DNA from: Haplodiscus bocki
Taxonomy: Eukaryota
Assembly: GCA_965655095.1 (NCBI GenBank)
Contig: OZ296652.1
Coordinates: 88,598,001 to 88,662,000 of the forward strand
Direction: 5' to 3'
DNA length: 64,000 nucleotides
How positions within the stretch are numbered: position 1 is the stretch's first letter; the number at the start of each line of letters is the position of its first letter. A model generated the notes under the pieces. It was not told the DNA's origin and did no database searches. It worked only from the letters and a program-made list of their open reading frames with translations. Below, in pieces: positions 1-19,429 of this stretch. Position numbers and translations under genes: made by a program.

Positions 1-117
1 ATCTTTTGTTTCGTAGGCTTTGAGAAACGAATCAAGAGCTCTGGTTCCAACAAGGAGTTCCATGATTTCAAAAAATTGACTATCCCCAAACTTGAAAGAA
101 GAAAAACCGATTGCTTT

Positions 118-1927
118 TCTTGATGACTGTCAGTTCTAAATCTCGCTCGTTTACAAGAATAGAGAGTACAATAGTTTTAATCATATTGATAACTCACTTT
201 ACGCTGTTGAGTCCAATTACTAGCAACACAATACAGTATCGTTAAAAACGTTACTGTAGATGAATCAACTGAGTTTTTTCCATTTGGAGGAACTGAATAG
301 ACAAATCCTGTTCTTCTTCGGTATCGCCGAAGCTTTCATAAAGAAAACACAAACCCTTTCTTTTGGATTTCCCTTTGGCTGAGTTTTTCCAGGTTACCAC
401 ACATTTTTACCCTGATTGTAGCTTCCTTTGAGCTTTACTCTGAGCAGCTAATCTTTCGAGAACAGCGAAAAACGACAACACAAGATAATGACGATCGGAA
501 ATGCAGAGAATAATGGGATCTGGAACCAAAATTGAGGGAATGGAAACTTGAAAAAGACCTGTTTGCCTATCTGTTTTGTAGTCTCTGTCTCATCGTACGT
601 TTATTCTTTGACACAGATTGTTTCAAAAGCAAAAACGGTGAAAATAAAAAAAAGCTTTCGCGCCTTTTAGGGAATGTTGAATGCATCTAATTTGTCAAAG
701 AAAAGTTTCCCCTGAACTCCTGGAATATCATCGGGGGAAAACGTTTATTCTTTGACACAGATTGTTTCAAAAGCAAAAACGGTGAAAATAAAAAAAAGCT
801 TTCGCGCCTTTTAGGGAATGTTGAATGCATCTAATTTGTCAAAGAAAAGTTTCCCCTGAACTCCTGGAATATCATCGGGGGAATTTGTTGCAGACGCTCA
901 CCACAGTTGGCTAAGTGTCTTTCTGGGTTACCAGTTTTGGAGATGATTGTGTCACCTGTACTATAGCCAAGAGTCATGAAAAAAGAATTGATGTTGCTGA
1001 CGCAGCAAATGTGAAGTTTGTAATGTAAGAGCTTGGTGTTTTTTTTCAAACATCGAACTTTTTTTCACGAGCAAGCTCTCCGTCATCTAAATTGATCGGA
1101 GTCTTGATGACTGTCAGTTCTAAATCTCGCTCGTTTACAAGAATAGAGAGTACAATAGTTTTAATCATATTGATAACTCACTTTACGCTGTTGAGTCCAA
1201 TTACTAGCAACACAATACAGTATCGTTAAAAACGTTACTGTAGATGAATCAACTGAGTTTTTTCCATTTGGAGGAACTGAATAGACAAATCCTGTTCTTC
1301 TTCGGTATCGCCGAAGCTTTCATAAAGAAAACACAAACCCTTTCTTTTGGATTTCCCTTTGGCTGAGTTTTTCCAGGTTACCACACATTTTTACCCTGAT
1401 TGTAGCTTCCTTTGAGCTTTACTCTGAGCAGCTAATCTTTCGAGAACAGCGAAAAACGACAACACAAGATAATGACGATCGGAAATGCAGAGAATAATGG
1501 GATCTGGAACCAAAATTGAGGGAATGGAAACTTGAAAAAGACCTGTTTGCCTATCTGTTTTGTAGTCTCTGTCTCATCGTACGTTTATTCTTTGACACAG
1601 ATTGTTTCAAAAGCAAAAACGGTGAAAATAAAAAAAAGCTTTCGCGCCTTTTAGGGAATGTTGAATGCATCTAATTTGTCAAAGAAAAGTTTCCCCTGAA
1701 CTCCTGGAATATCATCGGGGGAATTTGTTGCAGACGCTCACCACAGTTGGCTAAGTGTCTTTCTGGGTTACCAGTTTTGGAGATGATTGTGTCACCTGTA
1801 CTATAGCCAAGAGTCATGAAAAAAGAATTGATGTTGCTGACGCAGCAAATGTGAAGTTTGTAATGTAAGAGCTTGGTGTTTTTTTTCAAACATCGAACTT
1901 TTTTTCACGAGCAAGCTCTCCGTCATC
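118..1927. repeat. Perfect tandem duplication of an 826-bp unit (118-1087 including the inner duplication; 1102-1927) with a 14-nt filler
   Basis: 118.. matches 1102.. (offset 984); 741-1087 matches 1581-1927 (offset 840, giving identical 72-aa ORFs 831-1049 and 1671-1889); junction filler TAAATTGATCGGAG at 1088-1101. Confidence 0.95.
597..883. repeat. Nested 143-bp tandem duplication (597-739 = 741-883)
   Basis: ACGTTTATTCTTTGACAC...ATCATCGGGGGAA repeated at period 144, only in the first copy of the larger duplication. Confidence 0.95.
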
Positions 1928-3214
1928 AAAATCATTGTTGTGAAGGAAAAAATGATCTGCAAAAGATGTTTCATATGTGGGCGATTGTTCATGAGAACAC
2001 CTTGGAACTTTGAGATATCTGCTTACCCGGAGTTGTTCACGAAGGATTGAATTTTTTTGAAATCTCTTCTTCCAACATCTCATAGCGGTGCAGATGTACA
2101 GCGACTGCTTTAAACAAACAAAAATTGTCATTGTAGGTTGTCTGATTTACCTCTCAAACGTTAGACACTTGGCACTATCGATTGTCAGAAGCGGTTTTAG
2201 AAGTACAGCGTTTTCACACCCCATGAGAACATCTTAGATCAACGAAGCAAAAACAGTCAATTTTTGTATGCTTGTAAAATCTCCATTTAGTTTTATCTCG
2301 TTCCCAGCTGCAAATGTCAAAAAGTTCCGTTTTCTGTAGTCTCTATTTTAGATTTTTTATTTCGTCTGCAAAACAATCAAGTTTTGACTTTCCAAAACTG
2401 TTTTGTCTTCGTGAGCAATCAGATATCTACAAGATCCAGTTTCAACGTTTTTCAAAACAAATTTGATGGCGAGGTTGTTTTTTTCGCACAATTGAGCTCC
2501 TTCACGTTTTTCTTCTCCTCAACCAGAAAGTCCCTGAAGTTTGACTTGCTGAAATTGAATACTCGACACCTTCTTTTGTCGAACCCAGAATCTAACAGCA
2601 ATTGTTGACTTGTCCGCAGCTCTTCTTTGAGCTCTGTTTTGTCAACTCTCTCCAAAAAAATCCAAACCATCGTTGGATTACTTTAGCTGAACTCCAAAAT
2701 GACTACCTTTGTGTTTTATGAAAAGAAAAAAACCAGAGGTCTTCTCATTACAAATTTTACACTTGAAAGCAACATCAAGTTTTGGAGCGCTATATTTTTA
2801 GGCTATATGATAATTCAAGTTATCTTGGTTCGTTGTCGAGATATTGGGCTATTTGGCGCAATACAACGTTCAAATGAACATCTTTTTTTTGTGACGTCCA
2901 AAGTTAATTTTTGTGGTTTTGGTACCACAATTCTCACAAGTAACTTTCTCTTCGCGATTGAGGAAGACCTTTGAGTATTGAAAGTGTAACAGAAAAATCT
3001 AAAATGAACATAAAAATTGTAGCAACTTGTCTGCACTAATGCAAGAGAAGAAAAGGTTGAAATGTGTAGAATATTTTCATCACAATAAACCATTTTTGGA
3101 AAAAACCATAATTGGAATAATCAACCATGGAAAGATTTATCGACTCTAGAATGAGTTGTCTCACTTTCATTCACCCTAAAAAGCGACTTTCATTTTAAAA
3201 TACAAACTAAAGGA

Positions 3215-3442
3215 AAGACACAGCTTGTCTGTGGAAAGTTTTCGAGTGGAACTAGTTCCATGACTAAAATGACACACTGTCTGAGGAAGTCAATCGAGTG
3301 GAACAAGTTACCCTAATGTGGTGGCAGAATGACTGAAAGAATTAGTTGAGTGAATGTTTGTCCCTTGGTTAGGAGATGGGTTGTCTGAAAGAATCAATCG
3401 TGTGTATTGAGTTCCCCTGATTAGGAAACAGCTTCTCTGAAA
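3215..3442. repeat. Degenerate 52-bp tandem array (4 units plus a partial fifth) upstream of the PolB start
   Basis: Core TTGTCTGAAAGAATCAATCGAGTG...AGTTCCC recurs at 3225, 3277, 3329, 3381 and 3433 (period exactly 52). Confidence 0.8.
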
Positions 3443-3831
3443 AAAATATATTGTTCATCTTTTTCAGTTTCATCTCAATTGTCGAATAAGGAGACCTCCA
3501 ATAAAAAACGAAACTCAAAACTAGCACATTTACTGTAGTGTGGAGCTGAAAAGTGTTGAAACATCATCCAGCATGAGAGTGTACTTCAGCTAAGAGAACT
3601 CGTGATCCGAAGCTTTCTTCCACTGAACTACAGCTTCATAAGTCCTTATCAGAAAAGAAATACCTCATTCTGATTCGTTACGAAAAGGTGTTGCCCGTGG
3701 TGTTGCCATCGCCTAAAGTCAAAATTTTCAACCAATCTGCATCGTTTTCATAGCTACCCCATCAATATACTCATTTTGCAAAATTACTGAAAAAAAGGAG
3801 TTCATTTCTGTCAAAAGCAAACTCCCAGTTT

Positions 3832-4340
3832 GTGCAAACTGTTTTCATTTTTTCTCGGAGAATTACTAGAAATTTTTCCGGAGAAAAGAGACGTGGATAT
3901 TTTTTTTACCACAACAGTTTTGACATTCCCCAGTCACAGCATGGAATAGCACGAGATAGCAAAGTCTCCAACAAAAACTTTCTTACAAACAAATTGTTCC
4001 TTCTTTTGCCATTCGAAGACACAGCTACGTTACATCCTCCAAGAAGAATTGAAATTTTCCAAAATGGAATTGGGTTGTCTGATCAACAATTCGCGCAATT
4101 TTCCCAGTTTTTGATCAAACTAGCAAGTGTTTGCAGATTCTATTACCGATATCTAAAAGTGAGAATGCATATGCGAGATCAAAAGGCAATCTGTTCACTC
4201 ATTGCTCTAAAGATGTCATTGAACATTCAGAAAAACAAATTCGAATAGAGTTGGGTTTTGAGAAAACTAAATCTTACATCCTTCCGATCAAAAATTTGAA
4301 CGAAACGGTAATCGGGTATTACTTGCAGAAATTATCCTGA
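3832..4340 (+). pseudogene. Maverick accessory gene remnant, possibly PC4-like
   Basis: Overlapping ORFs 3832-4248 and 4131-4340; segment IEIFQNGIGLSDQQFAQFSQFL resembles the PC4 GI-L-xxQ(W/F)xxL pattern. Family assignment is inference. Confidence 0.35.
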
Positions 4341-4853
4341 GCCTTTTCGAAATTCACTATCTGTAGGAGAAGCAATATTAATTTGCATATAAGTGTGAAA
4401 TAGATGAGAGCAATTACAATATGGAACAGGTTCAGCCCTGATTATCAACATGAGAGAGGCTATAGGCAATTTTTCGAGAGCGTATCTTGTCCAAAAAAAT
4501 GTGTTCTTGTGTTTTTTGCGGGCACAAAAAGACTTTGCCACCTCTCGCACAAGTTTTCATGAGTGCCCTCCATGTGCATCTTTTTGTCAGGCCGTAAACC
4601 TCTTTCAAAAACAAACAATCATTTTTCCTGATGTGTAAGCGAAGAGAATTGCCTTTTTGATGGGACGCGAAATACAATTCATGTTGCTGGAATTGTGTAT
4701 AGCCCAAAAGGTGAAAACGAAAATTGTGGTGACATTTCAACTAAACAAAAAGCTGAAAATAGTTTCTACGACTGCAAAAAAGTAAAGAAGCAGGCTTCAC
4801 GTGTTTAATGTTTTAATATCGAAGAAAACTGTGGATGTCTAAATTCAGTGGAG

Positions 4854-5620
4854 ATGGTACACATTGATCCTCCAATCGCTATCAACCACGCCCAAACCCG
4901 AACGGAAAAAGACAATCATTCCATTTATAGCACTCAACCTTGTGGAACTCGGTCTGGTTGAGACAAAATTTTCAATGTTTCTCATCGAAGCTCATTTTAT
5001 ACAAGTTTAATATAAAGGTAAATTGCATGACTTTCTCAATTTCCAACGATATGATCTAGTGGTATCTCGACTTTGGACTAGACTGTGTTGTTCTGGCAGT
5101 AAAAGATTTCGTCCAAGAGATGGTAATGGGCTCTCAGAAATTTTCTCTGTCAGCTTGGAATTTGTTTTCGTCTCAAAGGCAGGAAATTTTTGACATCAAA
5201 TAGCTCGAATCCCAAAAACGTCCAGCCAGAAGGGACCACATGAAGTAAAGGAGGACGTTCTCTCTAAAACTGGAACAAAAGACATGGTTACCAGTGGCAA
5301 TGAGCTATCAGACTTGGAAGGGGAAGATATTAAGTTTTTCCTGGGAAAAACCACAGTTGAATGTAGATGTTGTGTTTAGACCAGGGAATCGTACCCCCCT
5401 TTTCGCACGACAGCGTTTGCTAACTTGCAAAAATGAGGTTCAGTAGAAAACCGCATTCTACTAGAGGATGAAGACGACAAGGAGCTGTCGCCACTCACAA
5501 CTCCAATGTCTGAGAAACACAACAGCCATTGCGTCGCTGAGTATTCGCCCATTTGGAAGAATAGATGAAAATATTCCTCAATATGTTTACAGTGATTTGT
5601 TTCAAAAAGTTTTACTGCGT
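4854..5620 (+). pseudogene. Maverick hypothetical acidic, Pro-rich protein remnant
   Basis: Fragmented frames MVHIDPPIAINHAQT..., DVVFRPGNRTP..., GSVENRILLEDEDDKELSPLTTPMSE; resembles from memory an accessory ORF of this element family. Confidence 0.35.
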
Positions 5621-6059
5621 TCGTATTTCGAATCAAAACATGATTAAATTGTTTCATTTTATTATAACCTTTTTTTAGGAACCATTCAGACGTGCGTGAG
5701 ACAAAAAAGTTGTTTTTTTTTGCCTTCAAATTGTTTAGTTTTAGAAGCTAGTTGCTGCTAAGATCGAGCTCTTCTCATACAGAGTGGAAACCGGGACGCC
5801 ACAGCGCAATCAACAATTGAAGCCCTTGGGAAAACGATACTGGAACTGTTTTTTGAACAGCGAAGGCTATCATCTACCTGACGAAAATATTGTAGGTCGT
5901 TGCGGCTCATGGTGGTATCGAGAAAAGCATTGTGAAAAGTACATATGGTGGGATTAAGTTAGACTTTGAAGTTAGAAGATTTTTCCTCAAATCAGGTTGA
6001 AAATATGTTTGAACAAATTTTGGAGCTTTTTTGTGCATTTTTCGGCTTTTAGTAAACCT

Positions 6060-6280
6060 TCTTGAACTTTATTTTTAGTTCACAAATCTGCATTCAAATT
6101 TGAGTGCTCAGTCCTGACCCTAACGTAAACTTTAGAAATGATGCCTAAAATTTGAGTGCACCTTCCGGAACGTAACCTTAAGTTCAGAAATCTGAATTAA
6201 AACTTGAATACACGTTCCTGAACTTTCAAATTCAAGTTCAAAAATCTGAGTTCAGGTTTGAGTATAGGTTCCTGACTTCA
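6060..6280. repeat. Degenerate ~52-54-bp minisatellite (4 units)
   Basis: AAATCTG..TT.AAATTTGAGT.CA.GTTCCTGA-like units at 6084, 6136, 6188 and 6242. Confidence 0.7.
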
Positions 6281-7542
6281 AATTGTTTCCATTACCCACT
6301 GTTAAGATTACAAAACGAGACAATATCAAATCAAAATATATTCGTCTAAAAATTTTCTTTTTCAAAATTAGGCGCCTTAAAACATTTGACACTCAAAATA
6401 TAACACGATTTAGGAATTCTGATTCAAAGTCTGACACGTTGTAGGAATAGTAATTGAAAATCTTGCAAAGTGCAAAAAACAATTCAGAATGTGACACGAC
6501 ATAAAATTTCAAATCTATGAAATCTGTCAATATTGTTTTCCAAGTTCTGCCAAAAAAATGTCTAAACTGAAAAAAGAATCCAGGAGTGCTCAATTTTTTC
6601 CCGGATGAGCTGTGGAGTCCGTCTTTTTGTAGGTTTCTGTATTGTTTTGAGACTGATGATTACAGTGATGGCTGGTTCATTTGCACTAGCAATTATCCTA
6701 TAAAGATCTCTTTGCGGTTCCAGAAAGGGTTAGTTTATGAAGATTTCCTATTGAAAAAAAAATAAATTACTAGCATAATTGTCAAGACCATCGAGGAAAC
6801 AAACTACAACTTAGATTATGTGATTGTTTGCAGTGCTTTTTCTTAAGAGTTTTTTCATCGCAAAGCAGGGCAACACGTCCACTCCTCTGGCTTTCTGACT
6901 AAAGTACACTGGTTTCTGCACAATAATAAACACTTTTATACTCCTGACGATAATTCTGGAATGTGTATATAGTCAATCCACGTGTTGGTTGGTGAAACAG
7001 AGTGCGTTAATATTCCGCAGCAACTCTTCAATGTCTCCATTAGGATGTTGAGAAATCTAGAGTTGGGTTGGAAGCACGTCTTGCCATCGTGACGTGTAAA
7101 ATAGTAGTTTTTATTCGCAAAGTATTTTGCATATGTGTTTGCAGAAAAGAAGACTGATTTCGGAATAGTTCTCGTAAAAACTGGGTAACACTTGTAACAT
7201 TACAGATGTCACCTGACATTTTCTGAATAAATGGTACTAGAAACCAAGTAGTTTTTTTGTAGAAGTTGAGCAAGATAGGAAGGAGGCCACTTATACGGAA
7301 AAAAAATCGTTTAATTGAGCAAAAAGTGAAAAGAATCTTCTTTTATGGGATTAACATGTGACAATGCTCAAAAAAGGAAAGAATCTTTTCGCATGGAAAC
7401 ATCACGTGACAATGACTGCAAAGTATATGCAGAATTTTTTAAACAATATTTTGCAGCTCCAAATATTTTCTTGTAACTTTCGTTCTCAAGGAAGAGACCA
7501 GTTTTTCCAGCTGCCAGTGTAGTATCCCGAAAATCAAAACCC

Positions 7543-8123
7543 ACGGCTTACAATACTACTGGTTCGATGGACAAGTCAACTTGTACCAACTACGTAGACT
7601 TTGGAAAAAGTCAAGAGAAATTGGGGTATTTCTTTTGGTCCAAAAATGTCTCCAACTGCTTGGATGTTGAACAAGAAGCTATCAAGAAAAATTGAAACAA
7701 AGAATCTCGACTAGTACAAAATTTTACCTTGGGAGAGTCAGACTTGGAACAACTTCTGAAATTACGAAATTGGCTAGTTATTGCACAGAAAACACCAGCA
7801 GAGACGAAAACTTTTACCGCGTGCTGATTTCAACAAGGTGCAGGGATAAGATTGAACAATTCAAACTGGCTCACAAAGTAGTAGTTGGCGCTGTCGACCG
7901 ACCAAACAGAAAACTTCGTGTGATTCTCCAGCGGTACAAAGTGGAATGCCAGAGAGTTCATGTGTGCAGTCCAATTTTTTGCACGAATGAAAGAGCGAGA
8001 AAAGTTTCAACCAGTTGTCTAAGTAAACTACAAACTTGATGATTTCATATACTTTTGCGATGTAATATGGTCTGTATTTGATAAAGTTGTAGGGGATCAG
8101 TCCATTTGTAATGTTCGTTCTAA
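7543..8123 (+). pseudogene. Maverick accessory protein remnant (possible tandem PC4-like ssDNA-binding fold)
   Basis: Start mutated to ACG: AYNTTGSMDKSTCTNYVDFGKSQEKLGYFFWSKNVSNCLDVE; continues as KLAHKVVVGAVDRPNRKLRVILQRYKVE (ORF 7692-8039) and ends QSICNV; frameshifted. Confidence 0.5.
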
Positions 8124-9458
8124 AGTGTTTGCAACTGTTTTACTCTTTATTATTCCACTTTCTATTCGCTTTAGGGTAAGTTGAAGTTTTGGGTATAACA
8201 AAAACCTCTTTCTCAAGCTAGAATCAAAATTAAATTGGCACCTTATCATGTTGTACTTACAACTCCAAAACCTTCTCGCGAAAAACTCACGATAACTGCA
8301 GTTGAAATTCAACACTTACCAGACATTAAAAAACTGATTCCGAAGAAGAAAGCTCCTGCCTCGGAAGGATACCATACAATGGGAGACGAAAAGAAATGGG
8401 TGAATTTTGGGAATTACAAGACTGATACAGACAATTTCAATGTTGTCATCTACCGTTACTGACACAATTTGTGCCTGAAAGATAATGAAATATATCCGAA
8501 GTTGACAAAATACCACTCACTTTTCGGAAAACGAGTTCTTCCATTGAGTTACATTGACATATTTTCCAAGTGACTGGAAAATGCTTTGTACTGCATGAAA
8601 CAACTGTTCATAAGAGAAACAAACTCCGTCAAGAAGGAATATTATCGTTCTAAAGAGCATTTCCCGCCCTTAATCAAAATAGGGACTTTATAATGTTGTA
8701 CTAACAATTTCAAATTTTTTCTTGCAAAACCTGCTCTAACTGAAATCAAAATGCAACAATCTGTAGACTATAGAGTGATTGATCCAAAAGACGAAAGTAC
8801 TTGCTTAAAATAGATAAATTATAGTGGTTGGAGAAAAGTTTGTGTAGAGTTCGAAGACAGACAGAGAAGTTAAACATTGTCGTGCAACGTTACTGAAAAA
8901 ATTTGAACCTTGAAGATAATGAAATCGATCTGAAATTAACAGATTACCAAAACATTCTAGCAAAACGAGTGTACCTAGTGAGATACATTGACGTTTTTTT
9001 GAAACGCTTCATTGTTGTGGTTTAAACAACGGTTCATAGTTGAATCAATTTTCATCAAGAATGGATGTTGTTTTTCTTTTGAGCACCTTTCCATGCTACT
9101 CGAGTAAAGTTGTCCTTTGATTACAAAAGTAGTCACAAAAACCTACTTCCCATTTCATGTGTCTGTTGGGATTATAGACGTTTTTTACGTGAGACAGACC
9201 CAAAATTTATATTTGATGGAATCATTGGTTATGGGGACTCTTAGTTGGAGTTTATGTTTCGTCTCCAAAAATTTTAGAGTACATGCAATACTACAAGATG
9301 CTGTCGGAGCAGAACGGTCACATTGTGGTGTAGGCCTCGGCTACTGTTATATGATTGGGCGAGGACCAAATTATGTGTGCTTGCTCACCTGACTGGACTA
9401 CTCTTTCGCTTTTACGTAAAACTCTGCCTTCCATATAAATTATCAACTTCTGAAGCAG

Positions 9459-9502
9459 TATGTCTTGCATTGTTATAGATTATGTCTTGCATTGTTATAG
9501 AT
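9459..9502. repeat. Perfect 22-bp tandem duplication
   Basis: TATGTCTTGCATTGTTATAGAT x2; frameshifts the gene start. Confidence 0.95.
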
Positions 9503-9945
9503 ATTCAGCTGGCAAAAAAAACCTTTTTGGGGAGATAGTAGCTTCTTTTGATGGGAATGTTAACGGGTACTCATTTCGTCCTCCAAAAAATTACAGACCC
9601 ACAAAACAAGCTTTTTTGGTGTACAACAAAATTTCACGGAATTGTGTGGAACTGTGGATCTTTGGATTGCAGTGAGATTCCGGTCATTCTTTCCTCACAT
9701 GGGGAGGCTGATTACTTTGCGAGAGGGTAAAAAAACAAGATTTTTGCCCAGATATTGAATAACGAGGTGGAAAACTTGGATGCTCATGGCTGCCTTAATA
9801 TTCAAGATCTGGCTGATCCTGAAGCAGTTGAAGAAGTGTGAATTTGTTCGAGTAACCCTTTCTAACACCAGACTAGATATCACTGTGCAGAGTTCAAAGT
9901 AAATCGTTTGCCGACCGGGTAATGCAGCAATTGAAATTTTACTTT
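9460..9945 (+). pseudogene. Maverick small DEDD/DnaQ-like nuclease-fold gene remnant
   Basis: MSCIVID(I)... FDGNVNGYSFRPPKNYRPTKQAF / WCTTKFHGIVWNCGSLDCSEIPVIL...DYFARG / VENLDAHGC...HCAE, spread over ORFs 9460-9675 and 9548-9730. Confidence 0.5.
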
Positions 9946-10302
9946 TTTTTGTGGATTGCTTTGTTTGTGTCTACTTGATGAAATATTTCAAATTGATTCA
10001 TTCTTTTTCACATAACTGAATGCTGAGTTTTTGCGCGTTTCAGCTAGGTGACAGTTTAAAAAGTTGAAATCAATCTTCGCAAAATTGTCTCTGACCACCA
10101 CAATCAAGAAAGAAAACCGTGGGCCTCTATGGGACAAAATTATTTCAGACCTGCGATTTTCTTTTGTCCCAGCTTTTTGTCTTTTTGCTGTTTATCTTTG
10201 GTTGCTTTTGGAAAATTCAGCGTTCAGAAGCTTGTGAAAAATCAAAGGTTTTGTTGGGAGTTTTGTTTAGTGCAGTCGGATACACTCTAAACTGACCAAC
10301 AC

Positions 10303-11216
10303 TAAGAGCAAGTTATTTTCTCTAAAATTCTTGTCTTTATAACATTGGTTGGTCCGTCCGAGACGGGAAAATCACAACTAGTTTTTAATTGGCGGAAAAT
10401 TGGAAATTCTTAACCGTGTTTCAACAAAATTCACTTTTATCAACACTGCCAGCTGTTTTAGGAAGTTATGCATTAAGAGATTGGGAAGCTCAAGGTGTAA
10501 ACTTTGATATTTTAGGTTCTCTAGAAAACAACGGTACATAGTAAATATATTTTTTTGACACATCATTTGCTGAATTTTTGCTATTTCAAAGCCCTTGTTG
10601 ATGTTGCTACAGCAGGAAAACACCGTGGATTGAAAGGATCTACCTTAGGCCCAACTTTTTTCATCAAAGTAAACTAGGGCAAGACGTTGTTCAAAACACG
10701 CACCTTGTTCTCCCAATTCTCCCCGTGCTTTGTTGCAAGTCATGACGCCCAGTGCGCCATTGGGGCTCAGAATAGAGCTGGTTGGATAGTATGACAACAA
10801 CGCGTCTGTTTCCTACAGTCATTTGTTGACTGATTTGTTGCTACGAACAGACGACCGATTACCTTTTTATAAAAACACTGAATCCATTCCCTCAATGGTT
10901 TTTATCCTCAGACGCTCGAAGCATATAAAGTCTTCGGACGATAGAAACATTAAATTTTCCTACTCTCCAGGTGTTCCAATCCTTTTCCCGCTCTTTTCTT
11001 TCACTCTCGCCCAAAATATATAATAATATAATAAATAATAATATAATAAATAATAATAGTGAGTCCGCTCGAAAGAAACTTGGAAAGCTTATAAGACATC
11101 ACGTGACAAATTTAACCGTTTTCTCGAAAAAAGCAACTCTGGGAGCAAAGAAGAGGCCCTCTGGCTTCCGCAAAAAGGTGAAAGCTCATAAAAGTTTTTA
11201 CGCCTCCCATCATTAA
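10303..11216 (+). pseudogene. A32/FtsK-like genome packaging ATPase, degraded
   Basis: Walker A LVGPSETGKSQL (~10346-10380); hydrophobic Walker B-like IFFD (~10550); VATAGKHRGL (~10603-10632); QNTHLVL; HLLTDLLLRTDDRL (ORF 10823-11023). Confidence 0.85.
11018..11059. repeat. AT-rich (ATA/AAT) microsatellite inside the ATPase 3' region
   Basis: ATATAATAATATAATAAATAATAATATAATAAATAATAATAG. Confidence 0.8.
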
Positions 11217-11230
11217 CCACTCGCCTTGAA

Positions 11231-11636
11231 ATGGAGCAGTTTGCCCTCGTCCCTGCTTCTGTGTACAACAAGTGTTTGAAGAGCCAGGCCTTTACAAAAC
11301 AGAAACTCCCAAAGTATCAAGCTGAACAAAATCCCCAGTACAGAATTGATTCAGTTGAACAGGAGATAAACAGTTTTTGTCAAAGCAGACTCTTCAATAG
11401 ACAAAGTTTCGTCTTGTCCACGTATGAAGCAGTCAAGTTCGCAGACTTTAGGTTTGTATGGTTGCGAAACTGGAATTAAGCTGTCAAACTCCGCTCAGGA
11501 ACTGCGTCGAAAAGAGGCAAACGTTCTAGACCTTTACTTTACTTTACCTGGAGCTGCTGGTTTATCTCCGACTCTGGTTTTGAATCAAAATGCCACATAC
11601 AAAGATTGAGGAAGCTGGTTCCCTTCAAAAATATGA
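11231..11636 (+). pseudogene. Maverick hypothetical protein between ATPase and integrase
   Basis: ORFs 11231-11479 (MEQFALVPASVYNK...) and 11424-11609 (...LRRKEANVLDLYFTLPGAAGLSPTLVLNQNA) joined by a frameshift; tightly packed between neighbouring genes. Confidence 0.6.
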
Positions 11637-12533
11637 ACGTCAAAAGCTGCAAATATAGTTTTCACAAGATGCTGCAGGTTATGCTTTGTTGCAAACCTTA
11701 GTCAGAGCTAGCAGTCTACTAGTATCAAAAGTGAAACAATTCTCGCTTTCAAAACCTTGGTATACAAAGTTTACTCTCGCCACGCGTAAATGCGTAAATT
11801 CAAGAGATTGGACGTTTTTTTCTAGATTCCAATCTAAAAATTGGTTTTTGGATCTGACATTTGTTGATGAACTAGTCTCAGATGTTACCAGTGTAAATTA
11901 TTCTCTACTTCGTCAAAACTTGATTGAAAGAACCGTTGATGCAAAAAGATGGAAGAGAAATGATTCCGAAGAATCTTTTCGAGCATTTTATCATTGATTA
12001 AAAGAAAAAAATCGACCATAAATCATTTGGGCTGACAAGGGTACAAAATTTGCTGGAGCGTCTAAAAGAGTTTGCAGCGTAGAAGGAATTCAAATTTGTT
12101 CTGCAATGATTAACACAAAAGCTGCCTTCACTTAACGTACAACACAATCCCTGGTGAATGTTTTTTAACGTTTTTTGGAAGATCATGGATACAAATACAT
12201 ACACAAATTGTCTCAACTTGTCACAACCTTGAATTCCAGAGACAATTGCTCGATAGACTTGACCCAAAAAGAACAAGTTTTCGACGGTTTGTCCATTCTG
12301 TACAGCGATCCAGTACAAACTATAGAAAACCCAACTTTAGAATTAGAGATAGAGTTTGCATCGCCATGTCTGATTTACGTTTGAGGAAATGCTATAAATC
12401 ACAGTTTACTTAAAAACTTTTCTTTATTGTTACATGTCCTTTGAAAAACCCCCTTATAGACACAATAAAGGAAGAACGGAATGAGATTATATGTGGTAGT
12501 TTTTATCAAAAAGTGTCCATCAAAGGGATTCAA
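11633..12533 (+). pseudogene. Retroviral-type (rve, DDE) Maverick integrase, degraded
   Basis: KVKQFSLSKPWYTKFTLATRK; WFLDLTFVD (first Asp); IWADKGTKFAG (~12025-12057, second Asp); KAAFT*RTTQSL (Glu position is a stop); MEDHGYKYIHKLSQLVTTLNSR; C-terminal TIKEERNEIICGSFYQK. Confidence 0.9.
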
Positions 12534-12535
12534 CA

Positions 12536-13340
12536 ATGGATTTTCTTAGAGAAGAGTTGGTTTGTAGTTCATCTGCACAGCTGTTTGCAGACAATACACT
12601 CAGCTCTTCTACGAGATATTGCCAGAGCAACTGAATCTGGAACGTCAACGTGAGGTTCAATTTTTGGAAATAACCTACCTGTCATTGTATCAAATTGTCA
12701 CAGACAAAAAGTTCATGTTTTTCGATGAAAAACGTTCAGAAACGTCTGTTTTACTATCCCGAACCCGGTTTGAACCCTTCCACAACGAATTTTGTTGATG
12801 CCTTGAACACTCATTTTCAAGAAAGACACAAGCACTGTGAAACCTGTGTTACAGTTAGTGTCTCGGCGAACGCAAAAAGATGAATTTTGCTTTGCAAAAG
12901 AAATATCTGACCTTGTTTGCTTCAGTAACGATTTGGGTCACAATTTTGAAAGTATTGTTGGCGATGAATTTGGAGTGATTCTGAGTGAGAAAGGACCTTA
13001 GAAACCAGAAATTGCTTACAAAATTGTCAGCATACACCCTCTCATGATAAACAGAGGTCTGATTGGGTTCAATGTTACAATATTGATGGACAAACAAAGT
13101 CAACCTGGTTGCGTTGCTGTCCATTTACTTTTAAATTGAAAAAAGAACGTTTTAACCACTGAACAGTACATGAACTACCAGACTTTCAGTAACCTACATT
13201 TCAGACCGCTGCCCAAAAATTCTTTTCATAGTCTTCACAAAGACTTGACAGATATGAGCGATGAAAATATAACCTTTGGAGCTTTCGGTGTAACTCGACT
13301 TCTTTTGATGTTTAGAAAAGCTTCCAACATTCATTCCAAA
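12536..13340 (+). pseudogene. Minor capsid (penton) protein, degraded
   Basis: ELVCSSSAQLFADNTLSSS..LPEQLNLE..EV; YYPEPGLNPSTTNFVDALN; C-terminal MNYQTFSNLHFRPLPKNSFHSLHKDLTDMSDENITFGAFGVTRLLLMFRK, the pattern of Polinton minor capsid proteins. Confidence 0.8.
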
Positions 13341-13358
13341 CGAAGAAGACGCTACAAG

Positions 13359-13730
13359 ATGATTGCCTCAATACAAATGGAGATTCCTTACTTCAGAAGC
13401 CTTGATTGACAGCAAGGAATGGGTGGAAGGCGTTTGCTGCACTTGCAAAAGCTATTGAGAGAACAGCATTTCCATTTTCCTATTTCCTGAAGTTGTCGTC
13501 ACAGCTAAAAAACGTGTGGATGTTACTTTGTTGAAGTCTGCTGCGCCAGAAGTTGCAGATGTTTTTAAGGGTGAAAAAGATTTAAGACGGCAGCAAAGAC
13601 TGTGGGAATGCAAACATTCAGAAAACCAATGGGTTGTGGTTATAAACAGAGGAAAATCATTCCAACAATAACTATCAAACGGACCAGTCACCAGTCGGTC
13701 GTGGAGAGACGTTTTTACAAAAACTTTTCA
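13359..13730 (+). pseudogene. Small basic, Gly-rich virion protein remnant (putative membrane-active or core protein)
   Basis: MIASIQMEIPYFRSLD*QQGMGG..FAALAK..IERTAFPF..VVTAKKRVDVTLLKSAAPEVADV; located between penton and major capsid. Confidence 0.5.
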
Positions 13731-13756
13731 TTGTCCTTTTCGAGCAATTTCTGGTA

Positions 13757-14452
13757 ACACTCTGTAGCAGTTTCTTGGATTCTTGGAGGGAAAGTCCCAG
13801 TAGTTGAAGATGTCTTGTCGCCCCATGAACAGAAGTTTATCCGACGACAACACTCCATGAAAACTGCGTAGAGTTTGAAATTCAAACGGATCGAAAATAT
13901 TACGTTGATTTGCGTAAACTGTAGTGGAGTTCAAGGATTTGGATACTCTAGCAAAGATTTCGCTCATTCCCACCAGACAAAGTGAGTTAATTCAACAAAA
14001 CATTTCCGACGATTCTCCCAGTTCGTCGGATTGCTATTGGAATGATCAGAATTTCTACTTCCACTGGATCGTACACTGAAAATCCATTCTGGTATCAATG
14101 TTTTGATCTGAGACACTTTTGAATACTCAGAGGTGGTCAGCCATTTATAAACTTTGCTGCTGTTGATAATTGTCGCTTATACGTTATGACGATGAAAGCA
14201 ATGAACTTCCAAGATGATATCCCCCCTCTTCCAATTGATAAGTTCAGAGACCACTATCTAAAAGCGTTTGATCTGACTTCAATGCAAAATGGCACTGAAA
14301 TTTGTCATTACCCAGAACTGGATGGAGAACCACTGACCCTTGAGCTAAACGTTGTTTTTCCTCTAGAACACGTTATCGAACTAATTCTATTGTGAGAACG
14401 AAAGTCTTTGGTTACAGTTGAAGACTTCGGTGACATTTGAAAGAAAATCTAA
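13757..14452 (+). pseudogene. Major capsid (double jelly-roll, hexon-like) protein with a large internal deletion
   Basis: N-terminal GGKVPVVEDVLSPHEQKFIR..HENCVEFE..TDRKYYVDLR joined at ~13920 directly to C-terminal VEFKDLDTLAKISLIP.., FTGSYTENPFWYQCFDL, MTMKAMNFQDDIPPLPIDKFRDHYLKAFDLTSMQ...GEPLTLELNVVFPLEHVIELIL. Confidence 0.85.
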
Positions 14453-14453
14453 C

Positions 14454-14838
14454 ATGGACAGCGTTGCTCTCCAGTAAAGAATCAACCATATCCTTCTAGT
14501 GCAATGTCGGTTCTTTTGATCATTCCCTCAAACTTTGTCTCAAACTCTTCCTAATGAAGTTTTTGCCATATTAAGGACGCAACCGAGCGAATTGCTGGGT
14601 GAACATTGGTGAACGATGGCAAACTCTCATCACGAATTGTGTTTTTCAGACTGTCTCGAAAGCGAAACGTACAGTTTCTTCAAAAAACATTTCCAGCAGA
14701 TGTTGCCAGAACAGCTACAGACCTATCCCAGCGTTTGCGGTTTCAACACGATATATGCAGCTTTCCTTCTCTACACTTTCAGACAAAAAAATGATTGTTC
14801 ACTCTGATAGTGTACTTTCATTTAACAAATGTAATTAG
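14454..14838 (+). pseudogene. Adenain-like (C5 family) cysteine maturation protease, degraded
   Basis: FAILRTQPSELLGEHW (His), LCFSDCL (Asp), EQLQTYPSVCGFNTIYAAF (Gln, Cys); in-frame stops present. Confidence 0.85.
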
Positions 14839-17258
14839 TTCTTATTTTCGATGTAAAAGTGCAGGTCTTTCAATGTTTTTCTGATCATTTGTACTCTCTA
14901 ACTAACTACTTCAAACCTTGAACCCAATTTTAACAGAACATGGAGTCACAACAGTATCGGCAGGCATCATAAAATTTTCTCAGACGATATAATTAACTGC
15001 AGACGTAGTACTTGTCCGCAATGCGCTCGCGTGCTGCCCACAAAGTTCATCAAAAAATTTCGAAACATTTTCTCAAAAAAACCTCAGAATATCAATGAGT
15101 TTTTAAACCCAATCCCTACCGTTACATTTTGCAAAAATCTTTTAGCCTAACCTAAGACATCGCTGTAAAAGCTTGATAGATTGCTGAACACTCTCGGATT
15201 TTGTCCGAAAATGAAAAATTGTCGGCAGCTAATCAGAATCAAGCACGAAAACCCTTGAACATCGTCAGCAAATCAAAATCGAAAATCACAACGACGAAAA
15301 AACACCCGAGAGACCTCGGTGGGCCGAATTTTTTGATAGACGGAACTTTTTGCTGGCAAGTTTTTGCCCCAAAAAAAATAGAAAACCTAGGCTTTTTTCA
15401 GTGGACTAGTGTTACTCTGTTGCACTTCTCTTGCTCAAAATCCCATGTAGGGCATCCCAGTAATGGTTAGGTGATGCAATATGACACGTTAGTTGCATTC
15501 AGTCTTCAGCCGATCTTTTTCTAATTGTTCACAGTGTTTTGACCGAAAATTTTTGAGGAAGAAAATGAATATTCAACAAACTATCTGCATTGTCTGAAAT
15601 TTAGCGCATTCAGCATGCCTCAAGAAGATGCATATCAACTGAATTGAAAAAAAGTTCAAGCAATATGTACAGAAGTGAGTTTTGATGCAGGTTTGGACTG
15701 CGAACGAACTTTTCTAATGGATTTTTCGCCGAAAATTGTTTAAAAAAAGGCTTCTCCAACCTTCGCGGACTCTTCCAAAAACTTTTACATTGGGTTGCAC
15801 AAACAAAAAAAAGTGAACTGGGCTTAGTGGTGCCAACTGGATTGCGTGGAGAAGCAGTCCAGAGCATTTCAGAGTACGCTCCGTCTTAAACAGCTAGTCT
15901 GGCCAAGGTGCTGTTTAAATGTCGAGAGTTTTTTTCATTTGTTGTTGCCCTGTGCGATATTTTAAAGCGACTCTCACCACCTGGAAAATTTTCTCGAGTC
16001 TGTGTCGTCTAACAACTCTCAACATCTTCTGAGTGCCCATGTCACCATGGGGTGGTGCAGAAAGTCTGTTGGTCGCTGGGAAAATTTATCGATAAAAGGC
16101 TTTTTGGGAAGATTTTTTGTTTCCGGATTCGTATCTTTTCACCTGACACCTAGTTGTCAATTTTTCGAAATTTGCTGCTCTGAGACGGTATTTGGTAAAC
16201 GTTGGCTGGCTTTTGCTTGTCTTTGAGATGATAATTTTTTTCTCAGCTGGATTTTGTTTGAAGTTATGATAGTTACCTTGAACCTCCGCTGTTTTCTCAT
16301 GTTGTTTTCTGCCTAATATCTTCGAATTTTGCTACAGGTTCTCTGGCTTTGCATAAACATGTGGTCAGTGTTGTAGTCAAGAGGTTGAGTACCTTAGCGA
16401 TCCTTGCGTTAAGCACCTTGGCCCTTATGTTTTTTATTTTCTCTCGTTCTTTTTGGAACGAAACATTTTTTGTAAGTTGGCGATGTTTTGATGATCAGCC
16501 ACGGAGAAATTGTATGAATTCAATAGCAGTTCGAAAATGTTTTTCTGTTGACGTGGCCGATTTGATTTGGCGTTAACTTTTTTTCACGGCCATGTCATTT
16601 CAGTTAGAGATAGAAACGTCGTTTTCATCATTATGCTTGCTTGAAGACAGTCCACTCTACGTCCCTAAGTTTTTACCTTTTCTTTCTTCTGTTACAATTG
16701 ATATTTTTTGAAACTTTTCATGGTAAACGAAATTTTCAGCAACAGACCACAGTTTGATGAAAATCGTCAAAAACCATTCTGGATTGAAACGTCTAAATTT
16801 ATGGAAGATTCTTCTGAGACATTTTTATTAGAGTCGATTGACAGACCGAGAAGGGCTGAATTTAAATTCTTAGTCTGGAAAAAGCCGATTCTTGTAATCA
16901 GTTTTCTTTTTCTACGATCACAATGTGTTGCAAGCTTTTCCTCTGAACTTTTATCCCTAGAACCGCTTTTACAGCATGCCAGTTCAGTCAAAAACAAACA
17001 CGCACAAGTTCTCAAAAACACCAAAGGGTCCCCCTTACGAAGTTTTTCGCAAATGTGAGACAAAAATCTTCGACTAAAAAATTTGCGTCAAATTTTTGTG
17101 ATACATCCTCCACGGCTTAGCCAAATGTTCGCGCCTGGCAGATGGGCAGCGCCGACTTTGAGCTGCTTTCGGCTTGATCTCGTTATTTTCCTCATTAATC
17201 GCAATCGGACCCTCTGCCTAAGCGTTCCACTGAGATTGTATCCTTGTCTCTGTTCCAG

Positions 17259-19429
17259 CTCTTGATTACGAGAAAACTGAAACTCTGGAACGTAGAGCAG
17301 TGGTCAAGAATTTGCTTCTTCAACAGTGCGAGAAGGCAAACATCGTGCTTTGCGATGAAAGTACTACGGCAACACAAACATTTTTGATGAAAAATTTAAG
17401 ATCGAATCAACATATCGTTTTATTCTCATCACTGAAAACCAGCCCGACAAAACACCAACCTACAACAATGGAGAAACTCTTAGGATCTTGTCTCCGCTCA
17501 ACTTGTCAGATAGCACGTTTCGCAAACAGTTATATTGAAAATGGGCCTAAAAATATTATACCAGCTTTTCCGTCGAACAATTTGGAAGGTGAAATTGTTG
17601 ACATTAGTTTCGTAAAAGACGATGCCTCTACGTACGATATTTTTGTTGCAAAGTGCTATGACGCAATTCGAGAGAACGTAGAAAAAATAATGGGTGCTGA
17701 CCACGTCCTAGTTGTTCCTTTTATGGAAACGGATGTTCTCGAAAAGTTGATCAAAAGACTGGAATATGGAAATATTTCTTTTTACTGTCATTTGGAAGGT
17801 TTGCTTGGTCCTGAGCATCAAAAACAAACCACAAGCAGTCATTTCAAGCCAGATGTCTTTCTCTGTGACCCCTTCAAAATTGAAGGTTGCGAATTCCCTA
17901 TCGTTTTGATTCTGATAGATGCTAAAGATTTGGAGACATTCAAGTTTAATCTAGACGGTAATAAATTCACCACTGCCATTACTAGAGCTTCACTTAAAGT
18001 GAAAATAATTGTGAATCATTTCAAAAATGTTGACGATGAAAGAGTGGATACAGTATTAAAAAAGGTACACGACAAAAAAATACAAAAATTTGTCGACGAA
18101 AACGGCAATAAGACTACGGGAAAGACAACGGTTCTCATTGTCGGCAAAAAACCACAGAACTTACATTTATGGAAGAAAAACCTCAACGAAGAATCCATTC
18201 CCAACGTTGACAACATATCGCTTTACGTTGGTAATCAAGGAAGTTTCCTTCACCTTGACGACATTTATTTGGAATCCGATTTTCTAAAATTGCAACAGTT
18301 TGGAGTTCAAAAAATTTTGCTTACAAACGAAAATGTTTCAAGTTTCTGGCATTACTTCTATGTATATGCATCTGCCTTGTGTATATCGAACTTTTGCTAT
18401 AGTAATCCGAAATCTTTCGCGCTAGCAGCTCACCTTTACAACCCCAAATTAATGAAATATCAAGTGAACCTGCATCTTAATTTTTTACAATATCAATCAG
18501 GAGACTACTCTGTGAAAATTCCCAGCTTTTGGTTAGATTTTGAGACAGAACCCATTCCAAAGCTCCATGGAGATAACTGGAAGACTTGGAAATCAAAAGC
18601 TGAAGAATTGATGAGATTTGGTGCGGCAACTCCTGCAGTTCATCTCTATGAGTGTTGTATCAAACTACTTAAGCAGCGATTAATTTCTAATGACGAAACG
18701 GAAGACAGCAAATTAGTGGTTGACGAATTGGTCTCTTTATCAACAACTGCTTCAAGAATTTATCTAGAACACACAAATGATATTGTTGAAGGAAGTAAGT
18801 TCGGATATGATTTTCGAGAACTTGTGGAGCAAGATTGTTTCATCAAAGCTTACAGAAACGTATTCAGTGCTATCAGATGGAAGCCACTCAGTCAAGAAGG
18901 GTACGGGATAACTACCAAGATAATGGAAAAAATTAAAGAATTCGCTGAAACTTCTGCTCATTCAACAGAGATTGCAAAACGAACAAATGAAGACAAACTG
19001 AGGAAAAATATCTACACATTTCGACAAGCTCCACTGTGTCCATTTACTGAAAATCACCCAGATTTTGAACATCAAATGAATGAATTGGACCACCTTGTCT
19101 CTGATTACGATGCGAACCGATTTGAAAAAAGGAAAAGCATTAACGCGCTCATTGCGCTAAGAAAAGACATTTCCAGATTAACTAGGAGCGCGTCTGAAGC
19201 TGCTTTTGGCAAAATTTTGGAGCAGTATGTTTTAGATACACCGGCGAAAGAATCTTTCCAGGTGCAGTTCACTGCCACAACTCAAATATTCGACTATTCA
19301 GTACAACTGGGATTGGAAGCGTTATACTGGGATCCTTCAGACCCAAAATGCAAACAAATCTTGCTCTCAGCCCTTGAGCACTTTGAGCTTAGCTGTGAAC
19401 GTTTGAAGATTTCATCATCCTTTGTATAA
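17259..19429 (+). CDS. Probable 3'-terminal exon of a host gene: SF1 (UvrD/Schlafen-like) helicase C-terminal part plus TPR-like helical region
   Basis: Open frame of ~720 codons (track ORF 17300-19429 starts at GTG). Pyrimidine tract plus CAG acceptor (TCCTTGTCTCTGTTCCAG) ends at 17258; in-frame stop upstream at 17231. Motifs: NIVLCDE (Walker B), LGSCLRSTCQIARFAN (motif IV), IEGCEFPIVLI (motif V), TAITRAS (motif VI); WKSKAEELMRFGAATPAVHLYECCIKLL is TPR-like. No Walker A in this exon. Confidence 0.8.

What the first reader, a model, noticed from the sequence alone, without database searches (positions are those of the whole stretch)
17259..19429. Lone intact SF1-helicase/TPR exon in a transposon graveyard, next to an endogenous virus
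Seen: the only long unbroken frame in 64 kb, with SF1 motifs II, IV, V and VI, a degenerate motif III, ~180 aa of unassigned alpha/beta-like sequence, then TPR-like helices; a good splice acceptor at 17258; no Walker A. Established: UvrD-like helicases occur in Schlafen antiviral proteins and are fused to TPRs in TRANK1. Inference: this is the last exon of a lineage-specific nucleic-acid sensor or innate-immunity gene under purifying selection. No Walker A exon was found in 14950-17250, so the Maverick relic may sit in its intron.
Basis: partly seen in the sequence, partly recalled or inferred. Interest (0 to 1): 0.75.

Follow-up and report, generated by a model that had tools for sequence, protein, structure and literature searches.

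The report
Last exon of nuclease-helicase gene
The long open frame is real and appears to be the second, last exon of an uncharacterised animal gene that joins a nuclease-like (NERD) domain to a very divergent SF1 helicase and a helical tail, with its first exon about 109 kb upstream, outside the window.

Summary
The frame is open from 17234 to 19429, and chance would give this about 3e-22. A polypyrimidine tract and AG end at 17258. SF1 motifs II, IV, V and VI are present and motif III is degenerate. No conserved Walker A is present.

Pfam, NCBIfam, PADLOC and PDB sequence searches all found nothing. An AlphaFold model (pLDDT 78) matches the SF1 helicase 2A domains of SLFN11, HelD, RecD2 and PcrA. 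An alpha/beta domain and ten helices follow; no TPR model matches them.

Relatives are rare: 131 clusters among 1.84 billion. Uninterrupted relatives carry a NERD domain and a Walker A just before the part that matches this exon.

A 430-codon ORF with exactly those features lies on the window's own contig. It is on the same strand, 109 kb upstream, and has a phase-1 GTAAGT donor that fits the phase-1 acceptor. Three paralogues show the same two-exon layout, with gaps of 7 to 37 kb. The two pieces tile the uninterrupted relatives.

An immune role is only analogy. The Maverick relic at 14950-17250 was not confirmed. No RNA evidence was available.

The parts
1..17258 (+). 3' part of the predicted intron. 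The whole intron is about 109.2 kb and the rest lies upstream of the window. This part is filled with repeat relics.
   Evidence: Exon 1 candidate P0175 lies at contig 48708-49959. The window starts at contig 141943. A six-frame profile search finds no exon-1-type sequence anywhere in the window.
17238..17258 (+). Pyrimidine-rich tract and AG splice acceptor (...ttccag).
   Evidence: Sequence read. A matching tract plus AG sits at the same aligned place in five paralogous loci. It is phase 1, matching the donor of the upstream exon.
17259..19429 (+). Terminal coding exon: two bases of a split codon, 722 codons, then the stop codon at 19427-19429.
17342..17359 (+). SF1 motif II (Walker B, IVLCDE), in the last part of the RecA1 lobe.
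   Evidence: The C-D-E triplet is shared by the relatives that cover this part.
17414..17431 (+). Degenerate motif III position (IVLFSS). Most relatives have FSSD or FTSD here.
17468..18025 (+). RecA2 (2A) lobe with motif IV (17489-17527), motif V (17882-17896) and motif VI (17972-18010).
   Evidence: Invariant columns. Foldseek probability 1.0 to SLFN11, HelD, RecD2 and PcrA over about 250-290 columns. Viral SF1 helicases match the same region.
18128..18496 (+). Conserved alpha/beta domain of unassigned fold (exon residues about 290-412).
   Evidence: Model pLDDT about 81-93. Invariant LFVG..P and H.DD columns. Shared with the acoel protein P0089 and the jellyfish protein P0076. No family hit.
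18578..19426 (+). All-alpha C-terminal domain: ten helices, helical-repeat-like. Not a recognisable TPR by sequence.
   Evidence: No TPR hit. Invariant W..W..KA.EL columns.
18104..18127 (+). Chance Walker-A-like string (GNKTTGKT). Not part of the ATP site.
   Evidence: Not conserved in any of 12 relatives. Coordinates.

Best explanation
Window 17259-19429 is the second and last coding exon of a two-exon cellular gene, one of a multi-copy family in an unnamed animal-like eukaryote (ENA assembly ERZ26859043, contig ctg87558).

Exon 1 lies at contig 48708-49959, outside the window. It supplies the start codon, a small N-terminal domain, a NERD (PD-(D/E)xK-type nuclease-like) domain, a helical linker, and the first part of the helicase core with the Walker A loop.

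The window exon supplies Walker B, the whole second RecA lobe with both arginine-bearing motifs (IV and VI), a conserved alpha/beta domain and a ten-helix tail. The predicted product is about 1140 aa.

Inferred mechanism. The product is an ATP-driven SF1 translocase on DNA or RNA, tethered to a nuclease-like head. The C-terminal alpha/beta and helical module probably serves as a partner- or ligand-binding part; relatives replace that module's end with a beta-helix and a zf-MYND finger. The most likely biological role is surveillance or processing of foreign or aberrant nucleic acid, by analogy with Schlafen group III and bacterial nuclease-helicases.

What is shown and what is inferred:
- Shown: exon anatomy, fold, family, constraint, and the partner exon on the same contig.
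- Inferred: actual splicing across 109 kb, enzymatic activity, and the biological role.
For: Exon status:
- Pyrimidine tract plus AG at 17258, repeated at the same aligned place in five paralogues.
- Coding conservation runs 5' of the first ATG, through motif II.

Partner exon:
- Uninterrupted relatives of 1000-1600 aa have a Walker A about 70 residues before the part that matches the window exon, and a NERD domain at about 78-190.
- L005 has a 419-codon NERD plus Walker A ORF 7.3 kb upstream on the same strand.
- A word search with that ORF found 64 similar ORFs. One of them, P0175, is on the window's own contig, same strand, upstream.
- The same pairing occurs on ctg185708 (27.5 kb apart) and ctg82172 (36.8 kb apart).
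- P0175's best match among all exon-1 ORFs is the partner of the window exon's best match, so the two pairings are congruent.
- The donor is A|GTAAGT, phase 1, at the same position as in the paralogues. The acceptor is also phase 1.
- The tail of exon 1 and the head of exon 2 abut on the uninterrupted relatives.

Fold:
- AlphaFold2 pLDDT 78; SF1 hits at probability 1.0.
- Exon 1 has NERD at 26.3 bits against a cut-off of 22.1. Foldseek points to PD-(D/E)xK restriction enzymes, SduA and Can2/Card1.

Constraint.

Not mobile-element cargo:
- Copies are only 27-41% identical.
- Flanks are unrelated.
Against: - There are no transcript data, so splicing across a 109-kb intron is unproven.
- About 82 kb of the contig between the two exons, from contig position 60001 to the window's start, could not be read. 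A nearer, uncalled exon 1 or other exons there cannot be excluded.
- No canonical AATAAA lies within 300 nt of the stop. The nearest signal is ATTAAA at 19761.
- Motif III is degenerate. In the NERD domain, the position where the family profile normally has an acidic residue before the lysine is N or S in every relative examined. Helicase coupling and nuclease activity are therefore both uncertain.
- The exon 1 model has only moderate confidence (pLDDT 66), and its Foldseek E-values are weak, 7e-3 and worse.
- Nothing ties the family to immunity. PADLOC gave no significant hit; the only match was a marginal one in a distant relative.
Confidence: 0.68

Rival explanations
1. Orphaned exon. The gene was once of the two-exon kind, but repeat insertions have pushed exon 1 about 109 kb away, or the true exon 1 is lost. 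The intact frame would then be an unexpressed or recently dead remnant.
For: The gap is three to fifteen times longer than in the three other pairs, which are 7.3, 27.5 and 36.8 kb. No exon-1-type sequence lies within the 17 kb upstream that the window holds. No canonical polyadenylation signal lies close to the stop.
Against: A 731-codon open frame in 37% GC DNA cannot persist by chance. The exon keeps 87% of near-invariant family columns, as do other singleton paralogues. Its partner P0175 is itself intact, with all invariant Walker A residues and a consensus donor. The two pairings are phylogenetically congruent.
Confidence: 0.15
2. Cargo or gene of a mobile or virus-like element. The ORF would be carried by a transposon or endogenous virus, and multiplied with it.
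For: Dozens of copies exist in TE-rich assemblies. In L001 a polB-like ORF lies upstream on the same strand. In the L001/L004 pair, DNA homology stops sharply near the exon ends.
Against: - Copies are old, 27-41% identical in protein, and all keep an intron at the same place and phase.
- The flanks of six loci share nothing but scattered repeats.
- The window's relatives of the L001 polB-like ORF lie 14 kb away on the opposite strand.
- No transposase, Rep or integrase domain is part of the protein.
- Viral structure matches cover only the generic SF1 core.
Confidence: 0.05
3. Stand-alone protein translated from an internal start (for example the ATG at 17387, as the gene caller did): a Walker-A-less pseudo-helicase.
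For: The automatic gene call P0001 starts at 17387. Homologous ORFs were likewise called as separate proteins of 665-777 aa.
Against: Those calls come from a caller that does not model introns. Sequence conservation, including the motif II C-D-E triplet, continues upstream of the first ATG to the acceptor. Uninterrupted relatives show the two halves as one protein.
Confidence: 0.05
4. Same gene model, different role: a genome-maintenance nuclease-helicase (repair, replication or RNA decay) rather than a defence or surveillance factor.
For: Nuclease plus SF1 helicase is also the plan of DNA2 and of bacterial repair enzymes (established knowledge). dN/dS of 0.31 is plain purifying selection, with no sign of positive selection in the one pair tested. 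There are no defence-family hits.
Against: - Housekeeping helicases are usually single-copy and widely conserved. This family has only 131 clusters in 1.84 billion representatives.
- It has many divergent paralogues per assembly.
- It has interchangeable C-terminal modules.
- Named members occur only in two acoels and one jellyfish.
Confidence: 0.2

Closest known systems
Uncharacterised NERD-helicase proteins of acoels and a jellyfish: XP_075261236.1 (Convolutriloba macropyga), XP_063714187.1 and XP_063717907.1 (Symsagittifera roscoffensis), and EukProt Sanderia malayensis P011829
   Same: These are true homologues. They are collinear over NERD, Walker A, helicase core and alpha/beta domain, and in part over the helical domain. 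Identity is 22-34%.
   Different: Several are uninterrupted ORFs or have other C-termini, such as a right-handed beta-helix or zf-MYND. None has a name or a studied function.
Schlafen group III proteins (SLFN11, SLFN13, SLFN14)
   Same: An N-terminal nuclease is followed by an SF1 helicase-like ATPase. SLFN11 is the best PDB fold match of the window exon (7zel_A, probability 1.0, 268 columns). Both are lineage-specific multi-copy families.
   Different: The head domain here is NERD (PD-(D/E)xK-like), not the Schlafen core. No Schlafen or SLFN-helicase Pfam model hits. This family has an extra alpha/beta and ten-helix tail.
Bacterial NERD-domain SF1 helicases and nuclease-helicase defence proteins such as Nhi (recalled from memory)
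   Same: Domain order: a PD-(D/E)xK-type nuclease-like head, then an SF1 ATPase.
   Different: There is no hit in PADLOC or NCBIfam. This gene is eukaryotic and has a spliceosomal-type intron. It has a different C-terminal module. The acidic residue before the NERD lysine is N or S.
UvrD/PcrA, RecD2 and HelD helicases
   Same: The fold of the 2A lobe, and motifs IV to VI.
   Different: There is no sequence-level match. There is no 2B insertion of the UvrD type. Motif III is degenerate.
TRANK1
   Same: A P-loop UvrD-like ATPase combined with helical repeats.
   Different: No TRANK1-type relative came back from any search. No ankyrin, TPR or UvrD Pfam model hits. The helical part here is C-terminal.
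DNA2 nuclease-helicase
   Same: The nuclease precedes an SF1 helicase in one chain.
   Different: No Dna2, AAA_11 or AAA_12 hits. DNA2 is single-copy and universal in eukaryotes, whereas this family is rare and multi-copy.

Membership tests
SF1 helicase superfamily | Two RecA-like lobes by structure | tested here: met
   The window exon model matches SF1 helicases at probability 1.0. The first lobe is split between exon 1 and the exon's first 60 residues or so.
SF1 helicase superfamily | Walker A (motif I) | tested here: met
   It is not in the window. It is present and invariant (G..G.GKT) in the partner exon P0175 and in 24 of 24 relatives, and in all uninterrupted relatives.
SF1 helicase superfamily | Walker B (D-E) and the arginines of motifs IV and VI | tested here: met
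   C-D-E at 17351-17359. R in CLRST and R in TRA are both invariant.
SF1 helicase superfamily | Motif III (G-D-x-x-Q type) | tested here: not met
   FSSL in the window, and FSSD or FTSD in relatives. There is no Q.
SF1 helicase superfamily | Match to a curated helicase sequence model | tested here: not met
   No Pfam, NCBIfam or PDB-sequence hit for the exon. Exon-1-type ORFs give only sub-threshold AAA_19 and PIF1 hits.
NERD domain (PF08378) | Score above Pfam's gathering cut-off | tested here: met
   P0175 scores 26.3 bits against a cut-off of 22.1. P0184 scores 28.7 and P0152 scores 30.1. The domain lies in exon 1, outside the window.
NERD domain (PF08378) | Acidic residue two places before the conserved lysine (canonical PD-(D/E)xK triad; recalled from memory) | tested here: not met
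   N in 23 of 24 close relatives, and N or S in distant ones. The E-I-D and K positions are invariant.
Schlafen group III | Schlafen core (AlbA_2-type) N-terminal domain and a SLFN-type helicase model | tested here: not met
   No such Pfam hit in either exon or in full-length relatives. There is fold resemblance only.
TRANK1-like | Ankyrin and TPR repeats plus UvrD-helicase models | tested here: not met
   None hit.
TPR repeat proteins | Match to a TPR sequence model | tested here: not met
   No TPR family at E<=1. The model shows stacked helices. Foldseek probabilities to TPR or designed repeats are 0.44-0.93 with low TM-scores.
Known anti-phage defence families (PADLOC) | Match to any of the library's models | tested here: not met
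   No hit for either exon or for P0089 and P0087. P0083 gave one marginal RecD hit, E 0.004.
Transposon or virus-like element cargo | Copies bounded by shared termini, young near-identical copies, or linkage to element genes | tested here: not met
   Flanks are unrelated. Copies are 27-41% identical. Element-type ORFs are not consistently adjacent.
Expressed, spliced gene | Transcripts spanning the predicted junction | not testable with these tools
   No RNA data were at hand.

The most novel reading that the evidence does not exclude
This is a member of an undescribed, expanded animal family of NERD-nuclease/SF1-helicase proteins with interchangeable C-terminal modules (helical repeat, beta-helix, zf-MYND). 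The family would act as a combined sensor and effector against viruses or mobile DNA. That would make it an analogue of Schlafens and of bacterial nuclease-helicase defence, independently assembled or anciently inherited, and confined to a few marine invertebrate lineages.
Probability: 0.3. Interest if true: 0.75.

Novelty: new variant of a known kind. Interest (0 to 1): 0.5.

Why it matters
If the model is right, this is a real, constrained gene that automatic annotation misses. Its two exons lie about 109 kb apart, and no curated sequence model recognises its helicase.

The family joins a restriction-enzyme-like head to an SF1 motor and a variable tail. That is the same logic as Schlafen proteins and bacterial nuclease-helicase immunity, yet the family is unnamed and seen so far only in acoels, a jellyfish and unnamed assemblies. 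It would add a candidate to the list of nucleic-acid surveillance genes of early-branching animals.

It is also a worked example of recovering split genes from metagenome-type assemblies. If the function turns out to be ordinary genome maintenance, the finding is a modest annotation gain.

Tried and rejected
Searches of the exon and its family that found nothing significant:
- Pfam, NCBIfam, PADLOC and PDB-sequence searches of the exon.
- PDB-sequence searches with the family profiles.

Searches for the upstream exon that failed:
- tblastn of upstream open stretches between six loci. No shared upstream coding sequence lies within 10 kb.
- A Walker A pattern scan of the window upstream of the exon. 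The only hit is a 35-codon open stretch at 10306-10410 (GPSETGKS). It does not match the family's exon 1 profile and was rejected as the missing exon.
- The polB-like ORFs upstream of the paralogue in L001 looked at first like linked genes. Their window relatives lie at about 100-3000 on the opposite strand, so the adjacency is coincidental.

Other checks:
- The 'Maverick relic' at 14950-17250 gave no Pfam hit in its longest open stretches.
- Rfam found nothing in the window.
- Literature searches for NERD-helicases in animals, for Nhi and for TRANK1 architecture returned nothing bearing on this family.
- The source organism could not be named.

Steps left out or unused:
- The third word search was left unused.
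Each exon was searched and folded on its own.
Full report
1. THE OBSERVATION

The + strand frame is open from 17234 to the stop at 19427-19429, which is 731 codons. No other ORF in the 64 kb exceeds 300 aa. The runners-up lie on the minus strand of a G-rich low-complexity tract, where stop codons are rare by composition. With the local base composition, a stop is expected in 6.6% of codons. An open run of this length therefore has a probability of about 3e-22.

The reading frame has codon boundaries at 17258/17261, so an exon starting at 17259 opens with two bases of a split codon. That makes the intron phase 1.

2. WHAT THE EXON ENCODES

No curated sequence library recognises the exon. The searches were Pfam at E<=1, PDB sequences, NCBIfam and PADLOC.

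A word search found 12 relatives of 665-777 aa at 29-41% identity. All come from two ENA assemblies, and one of them (ERZ26859043) also holds the window itself.

The alignment shows these invariant features:
- C-L-R-S-T...F-A-N (motif IV).
- E-G-C-E-F (motif V).
- T-A-x-T-R-A (motif VI).
- A shared C-D-E after a hydrophobic strand (motif II).

The motif III position is F-S-S-L in the window and F-S-S-D in most relatives, so it is degenerate.

An AlphaFold2 model built on that alignment has mean pLDDT 77.9. Foldseek against the PDB gives probability 1.0 matches over about 250-290 columns to SLFN11, the HelD C-terminal domain, RecD2, PcrA and SLFN14. Against viral models it matches only generic SF1 helicases over the same stretch.

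After the helicase part come three further elements:
- A long helix.
- A conserved alpha/beta domain at residues about 290-412, of unassigned fold.
- Ten helices at residues about 440-721.

No TPR model matches the helices, so 'helical-repeat-like' is as far as the evidence goes.

The string GNKTTGKT at 18104-18127 fits the Walker A pattern but is unique to this copy. It is chance.

3. IT IS AN EXON, AND WHERE THE REST IS

In all five paralogous loci fetched, the frame closes a few codons upstream of the conserved sequence. A pyrimidine tract plus AG sits at the same aligned place in each.

The full HMMER search with the family profile found only 131 clusters among 1.84 billion representatives. 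I used it because the family scans left the protein open. Among the hits are proteins of 1000-1600 aa in which the window-like helicase part starts near residue 425-490. All of these have a Walker A about 70 residues earlier, several have a Pfam NERD domain at about 78-190, and several end in a beta-helix or zf-MYND.

Named members are few:
- 'Uncharacterized proteins' of the acoels Convolutriloba macropyga and Symsagittifera roscoffensis.
- A EukProt model of the jellyfish Sanderia malayensis.

In locus L005, a 419-codon ORF with NERD and a Walker A lies 7.3 kb upstream of the paralogue, on the same strand. A retroelement integrase on the opposite strand lies between them. A word search with that ORF returned 64 ORFs of about 415 aa. 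The contig lengths in that table pointed to the contigs of known exon-2 copies, and look-ups confirmed it.

The four pairs, each on one strand and in the right order, are:
- The window's contig, ctg87558: P0175 at 48708-50000, with the window exon at 159201-161371.
- ctg185708: the two ORFs 27.5 kb apart.
- ctg82172: 36.8 kb apart.
- L005: 7.3 kb apart.

4. TESTS OF THE PAIRING

(a) Congruence. P0175's best match among all exon-1 ORFs is P0184 (51%). P0184 is the partner of P0002, which is the window exon's best match (41%).

(b) Splice signals. P0175's frame contains ...TCA A|GTAAGT. The paralogues have G|GTAAT and G|GCAAGT at the same aligned position. All are phase 1, as is the window's acceptor.

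(c) Tiling. P0175 aligns to residues about 3-420 of uninterrupted relatives, and the window exon aligns from about 429 on. A fragment alignment shows exon 1 ending, and exon 2 beginning, within some 15-20 residues of each other. No intervening exon is needed.

(d) Nearer partners. No exon-2-type sequence lies within 10 kb downstream of exon 1 in three loci. No exon-1-type sequence lies anywhere in the window.

The resulting model is:
- Exon 1: contig 48708-49959.
- Intron: 109,241 bp.
- Exon 2: window 17259-19429.
- Product: 417 + 1 + 722 = 1140 aa, close to the 1066-1172 aa of collinear relatives.

Window bases 1-17258 would all be intron.

Each exon was handled on its own.

5. EXON 1 IN BRIEF

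NERD scores 26.3 bits against a cut-off of 22.1. The model is of moderate confidence (pLDDT 65.6). Its best PDB fold matches are PD-(D/E)xK enzymes: BstEII, BspD6I, SduA, Can2/Card1 and EndoMS. These are weak, with E-values of 7e-3 and worse.

The family keeps E-I-D and a lysine invariant. The residue two places before the lysine is N, or S in distant relatives, where I recall canonical NERD domains having an acidic residue. Nuclease competence is therefore open.

6. CONSTRAINT AND THE MOBILE-ELEMENT RIVAL

The window exon keeps 71 of 82 near-invariant columns. That is in the range of other paralogues that have no close sister in the alignment.

The closest pair available (L001/L004, 82% aa identity) has dS 0.30 and dN/dS 0.31. 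By region, dN/dS is 0.31 for the helicase, 0.18 for the alpha/beta domain and 0.43 for the helical tail.

Copies are old and their flanks share only scattered repeats. The polB-like ORFs next to one paralogue have their window relatives 14 kb away on the other strand. No transposase-type domain belongs to the protein. This argues against cargo of a mobile or virus-like element.

One oddity remains. In the L001/L004 pair, DNA similarity stops about 10 bp before the acceptor and about 50 bp after the stop, although dS is only 0.30.

7. HOW IT MOST LIKELY WORKS

Shown: an ATP site can be assembled from the Walker A in exon 1 and, in exon 2, the Walker B and the two arginines. There is a RecA2 lobe of SF1 type, a nuclease-like head, and a conserved C-terminal module.

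Inferred: an ATP-driven translocase on nucleic acid, coupled to cleavage or recognition. The tail would serve as a binding or regulatory part.

A defence or surveillance role is suggested by three things:
- The plan is the same as Schlafen group III and bacterial nuclease-helicases.
- The family is rare, multi-copy and divergent.
- The C-terminal modules are swapped among relatives.

No direct evidence supports such a role. PADLOC gave no significant hit, and plain purifying selection is all that the one pair tested shows. A genome-maintenance role is a live alternative.

8. COMPARISON AND NOVELTY

The gene belongs to the SF1 superfamily by fold and motifs, and to the NERD family by score. It fails the tests for Schlafen, TRANK1, DNA2 and TPR membership, and for every defence family in PADLOC.

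Its true relatives are unnamed proteins of acoels and a jellyfish. I rate it a new variant of a known kind (nuclease plus SF1 helicase fusions).

9. SURROUNDINGS

- The region 14950-17250 gave no Pfam hit, so the 'Maverick relic' is not confirmed.
- Fragmentary polB-like pieces lie within about 100-3000 on the minus strand.
- An RT RNase H relic lies at 38665-39063.
- From about 47.7 kb to the end of the window runs a C-poor G-rich degenerate repeat.

10. LIMITS

There are no RNA data. About 82 kb of the contig between the exons is unread.

I left out any database search seeded with the polB-like relic. I could not tell whether that would count as fetching relatives of a virus-like element of animals.

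Noticed in passing
window 47700-64000 (runs off the 3' end): More than 16 kb of strongly strand-asymmetric DNA, with GC skew +0.6 to +0.79 and GC about 0.50. It is built of irregular, degenerate G-rich units around a core CTTGAAGAAGT. 98 of 100 matches with at most one mismatch lie here, all on the + strand, against 2.8 expected. The only clean tandem is a 328-bp unit at 52055-52723. The long minus-strand ORFs here are a by-product of composition.
   Followed up: partly
window 100-3000, minus strand: Fragmentary pieces 31-48% identical to polB-like ORFs seen intact-looking in locus L001 (4750-7911). The pieces occur twice, about 985 bp apart. An exact 144-bp tandem lies at 597-883. No database search was seeded with them.
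   Followed up: partly
window 38665-39063 (+), within about 34600-45000: RT RNase H-like domain (PF17917, 25.6 bits) and reverse-transcriptase-like open stretches: a decayed LTR-type retroelement.
   Followed up: partly
window 10306-10410 (+): A 35-codon open stretch with a P-loop (GPSETGKS) preceded by a hydrophobic strand. It is unrelated to the family's exon 1 profile. It may be a relic of some element's ATPase.
   Followed up: partly
L001 10071-12383 versus L004 9930-12269: Two paralogues in another assembly are 86% identical in DNA across the exon only. Similarity stops about 10 bp before the acceptor and about 50 bp after the stop, although dS is just 0.30. Conversion limited to the exon, or very fast turnover of flanks, might explain this. 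It remains unexplained.
   Followed up: partly
L005 5216-9098 (minus strand): A retroelement with integrase (rve, Integrase_H2C2) sits inside the 7.3-kb intron of the paralogue P0007. This shows that the family's intron is a sink for insertions.
   Followed up: no
relatives P0076, P0084, P0087 (L011 3001-7797): Uninterrupted 1350-1600 aa members of the wider family end in a right-handed beta-helix (PF13229). One also has a zf-MYND finger, in place of part of the helical tail.
   Followed up: partly
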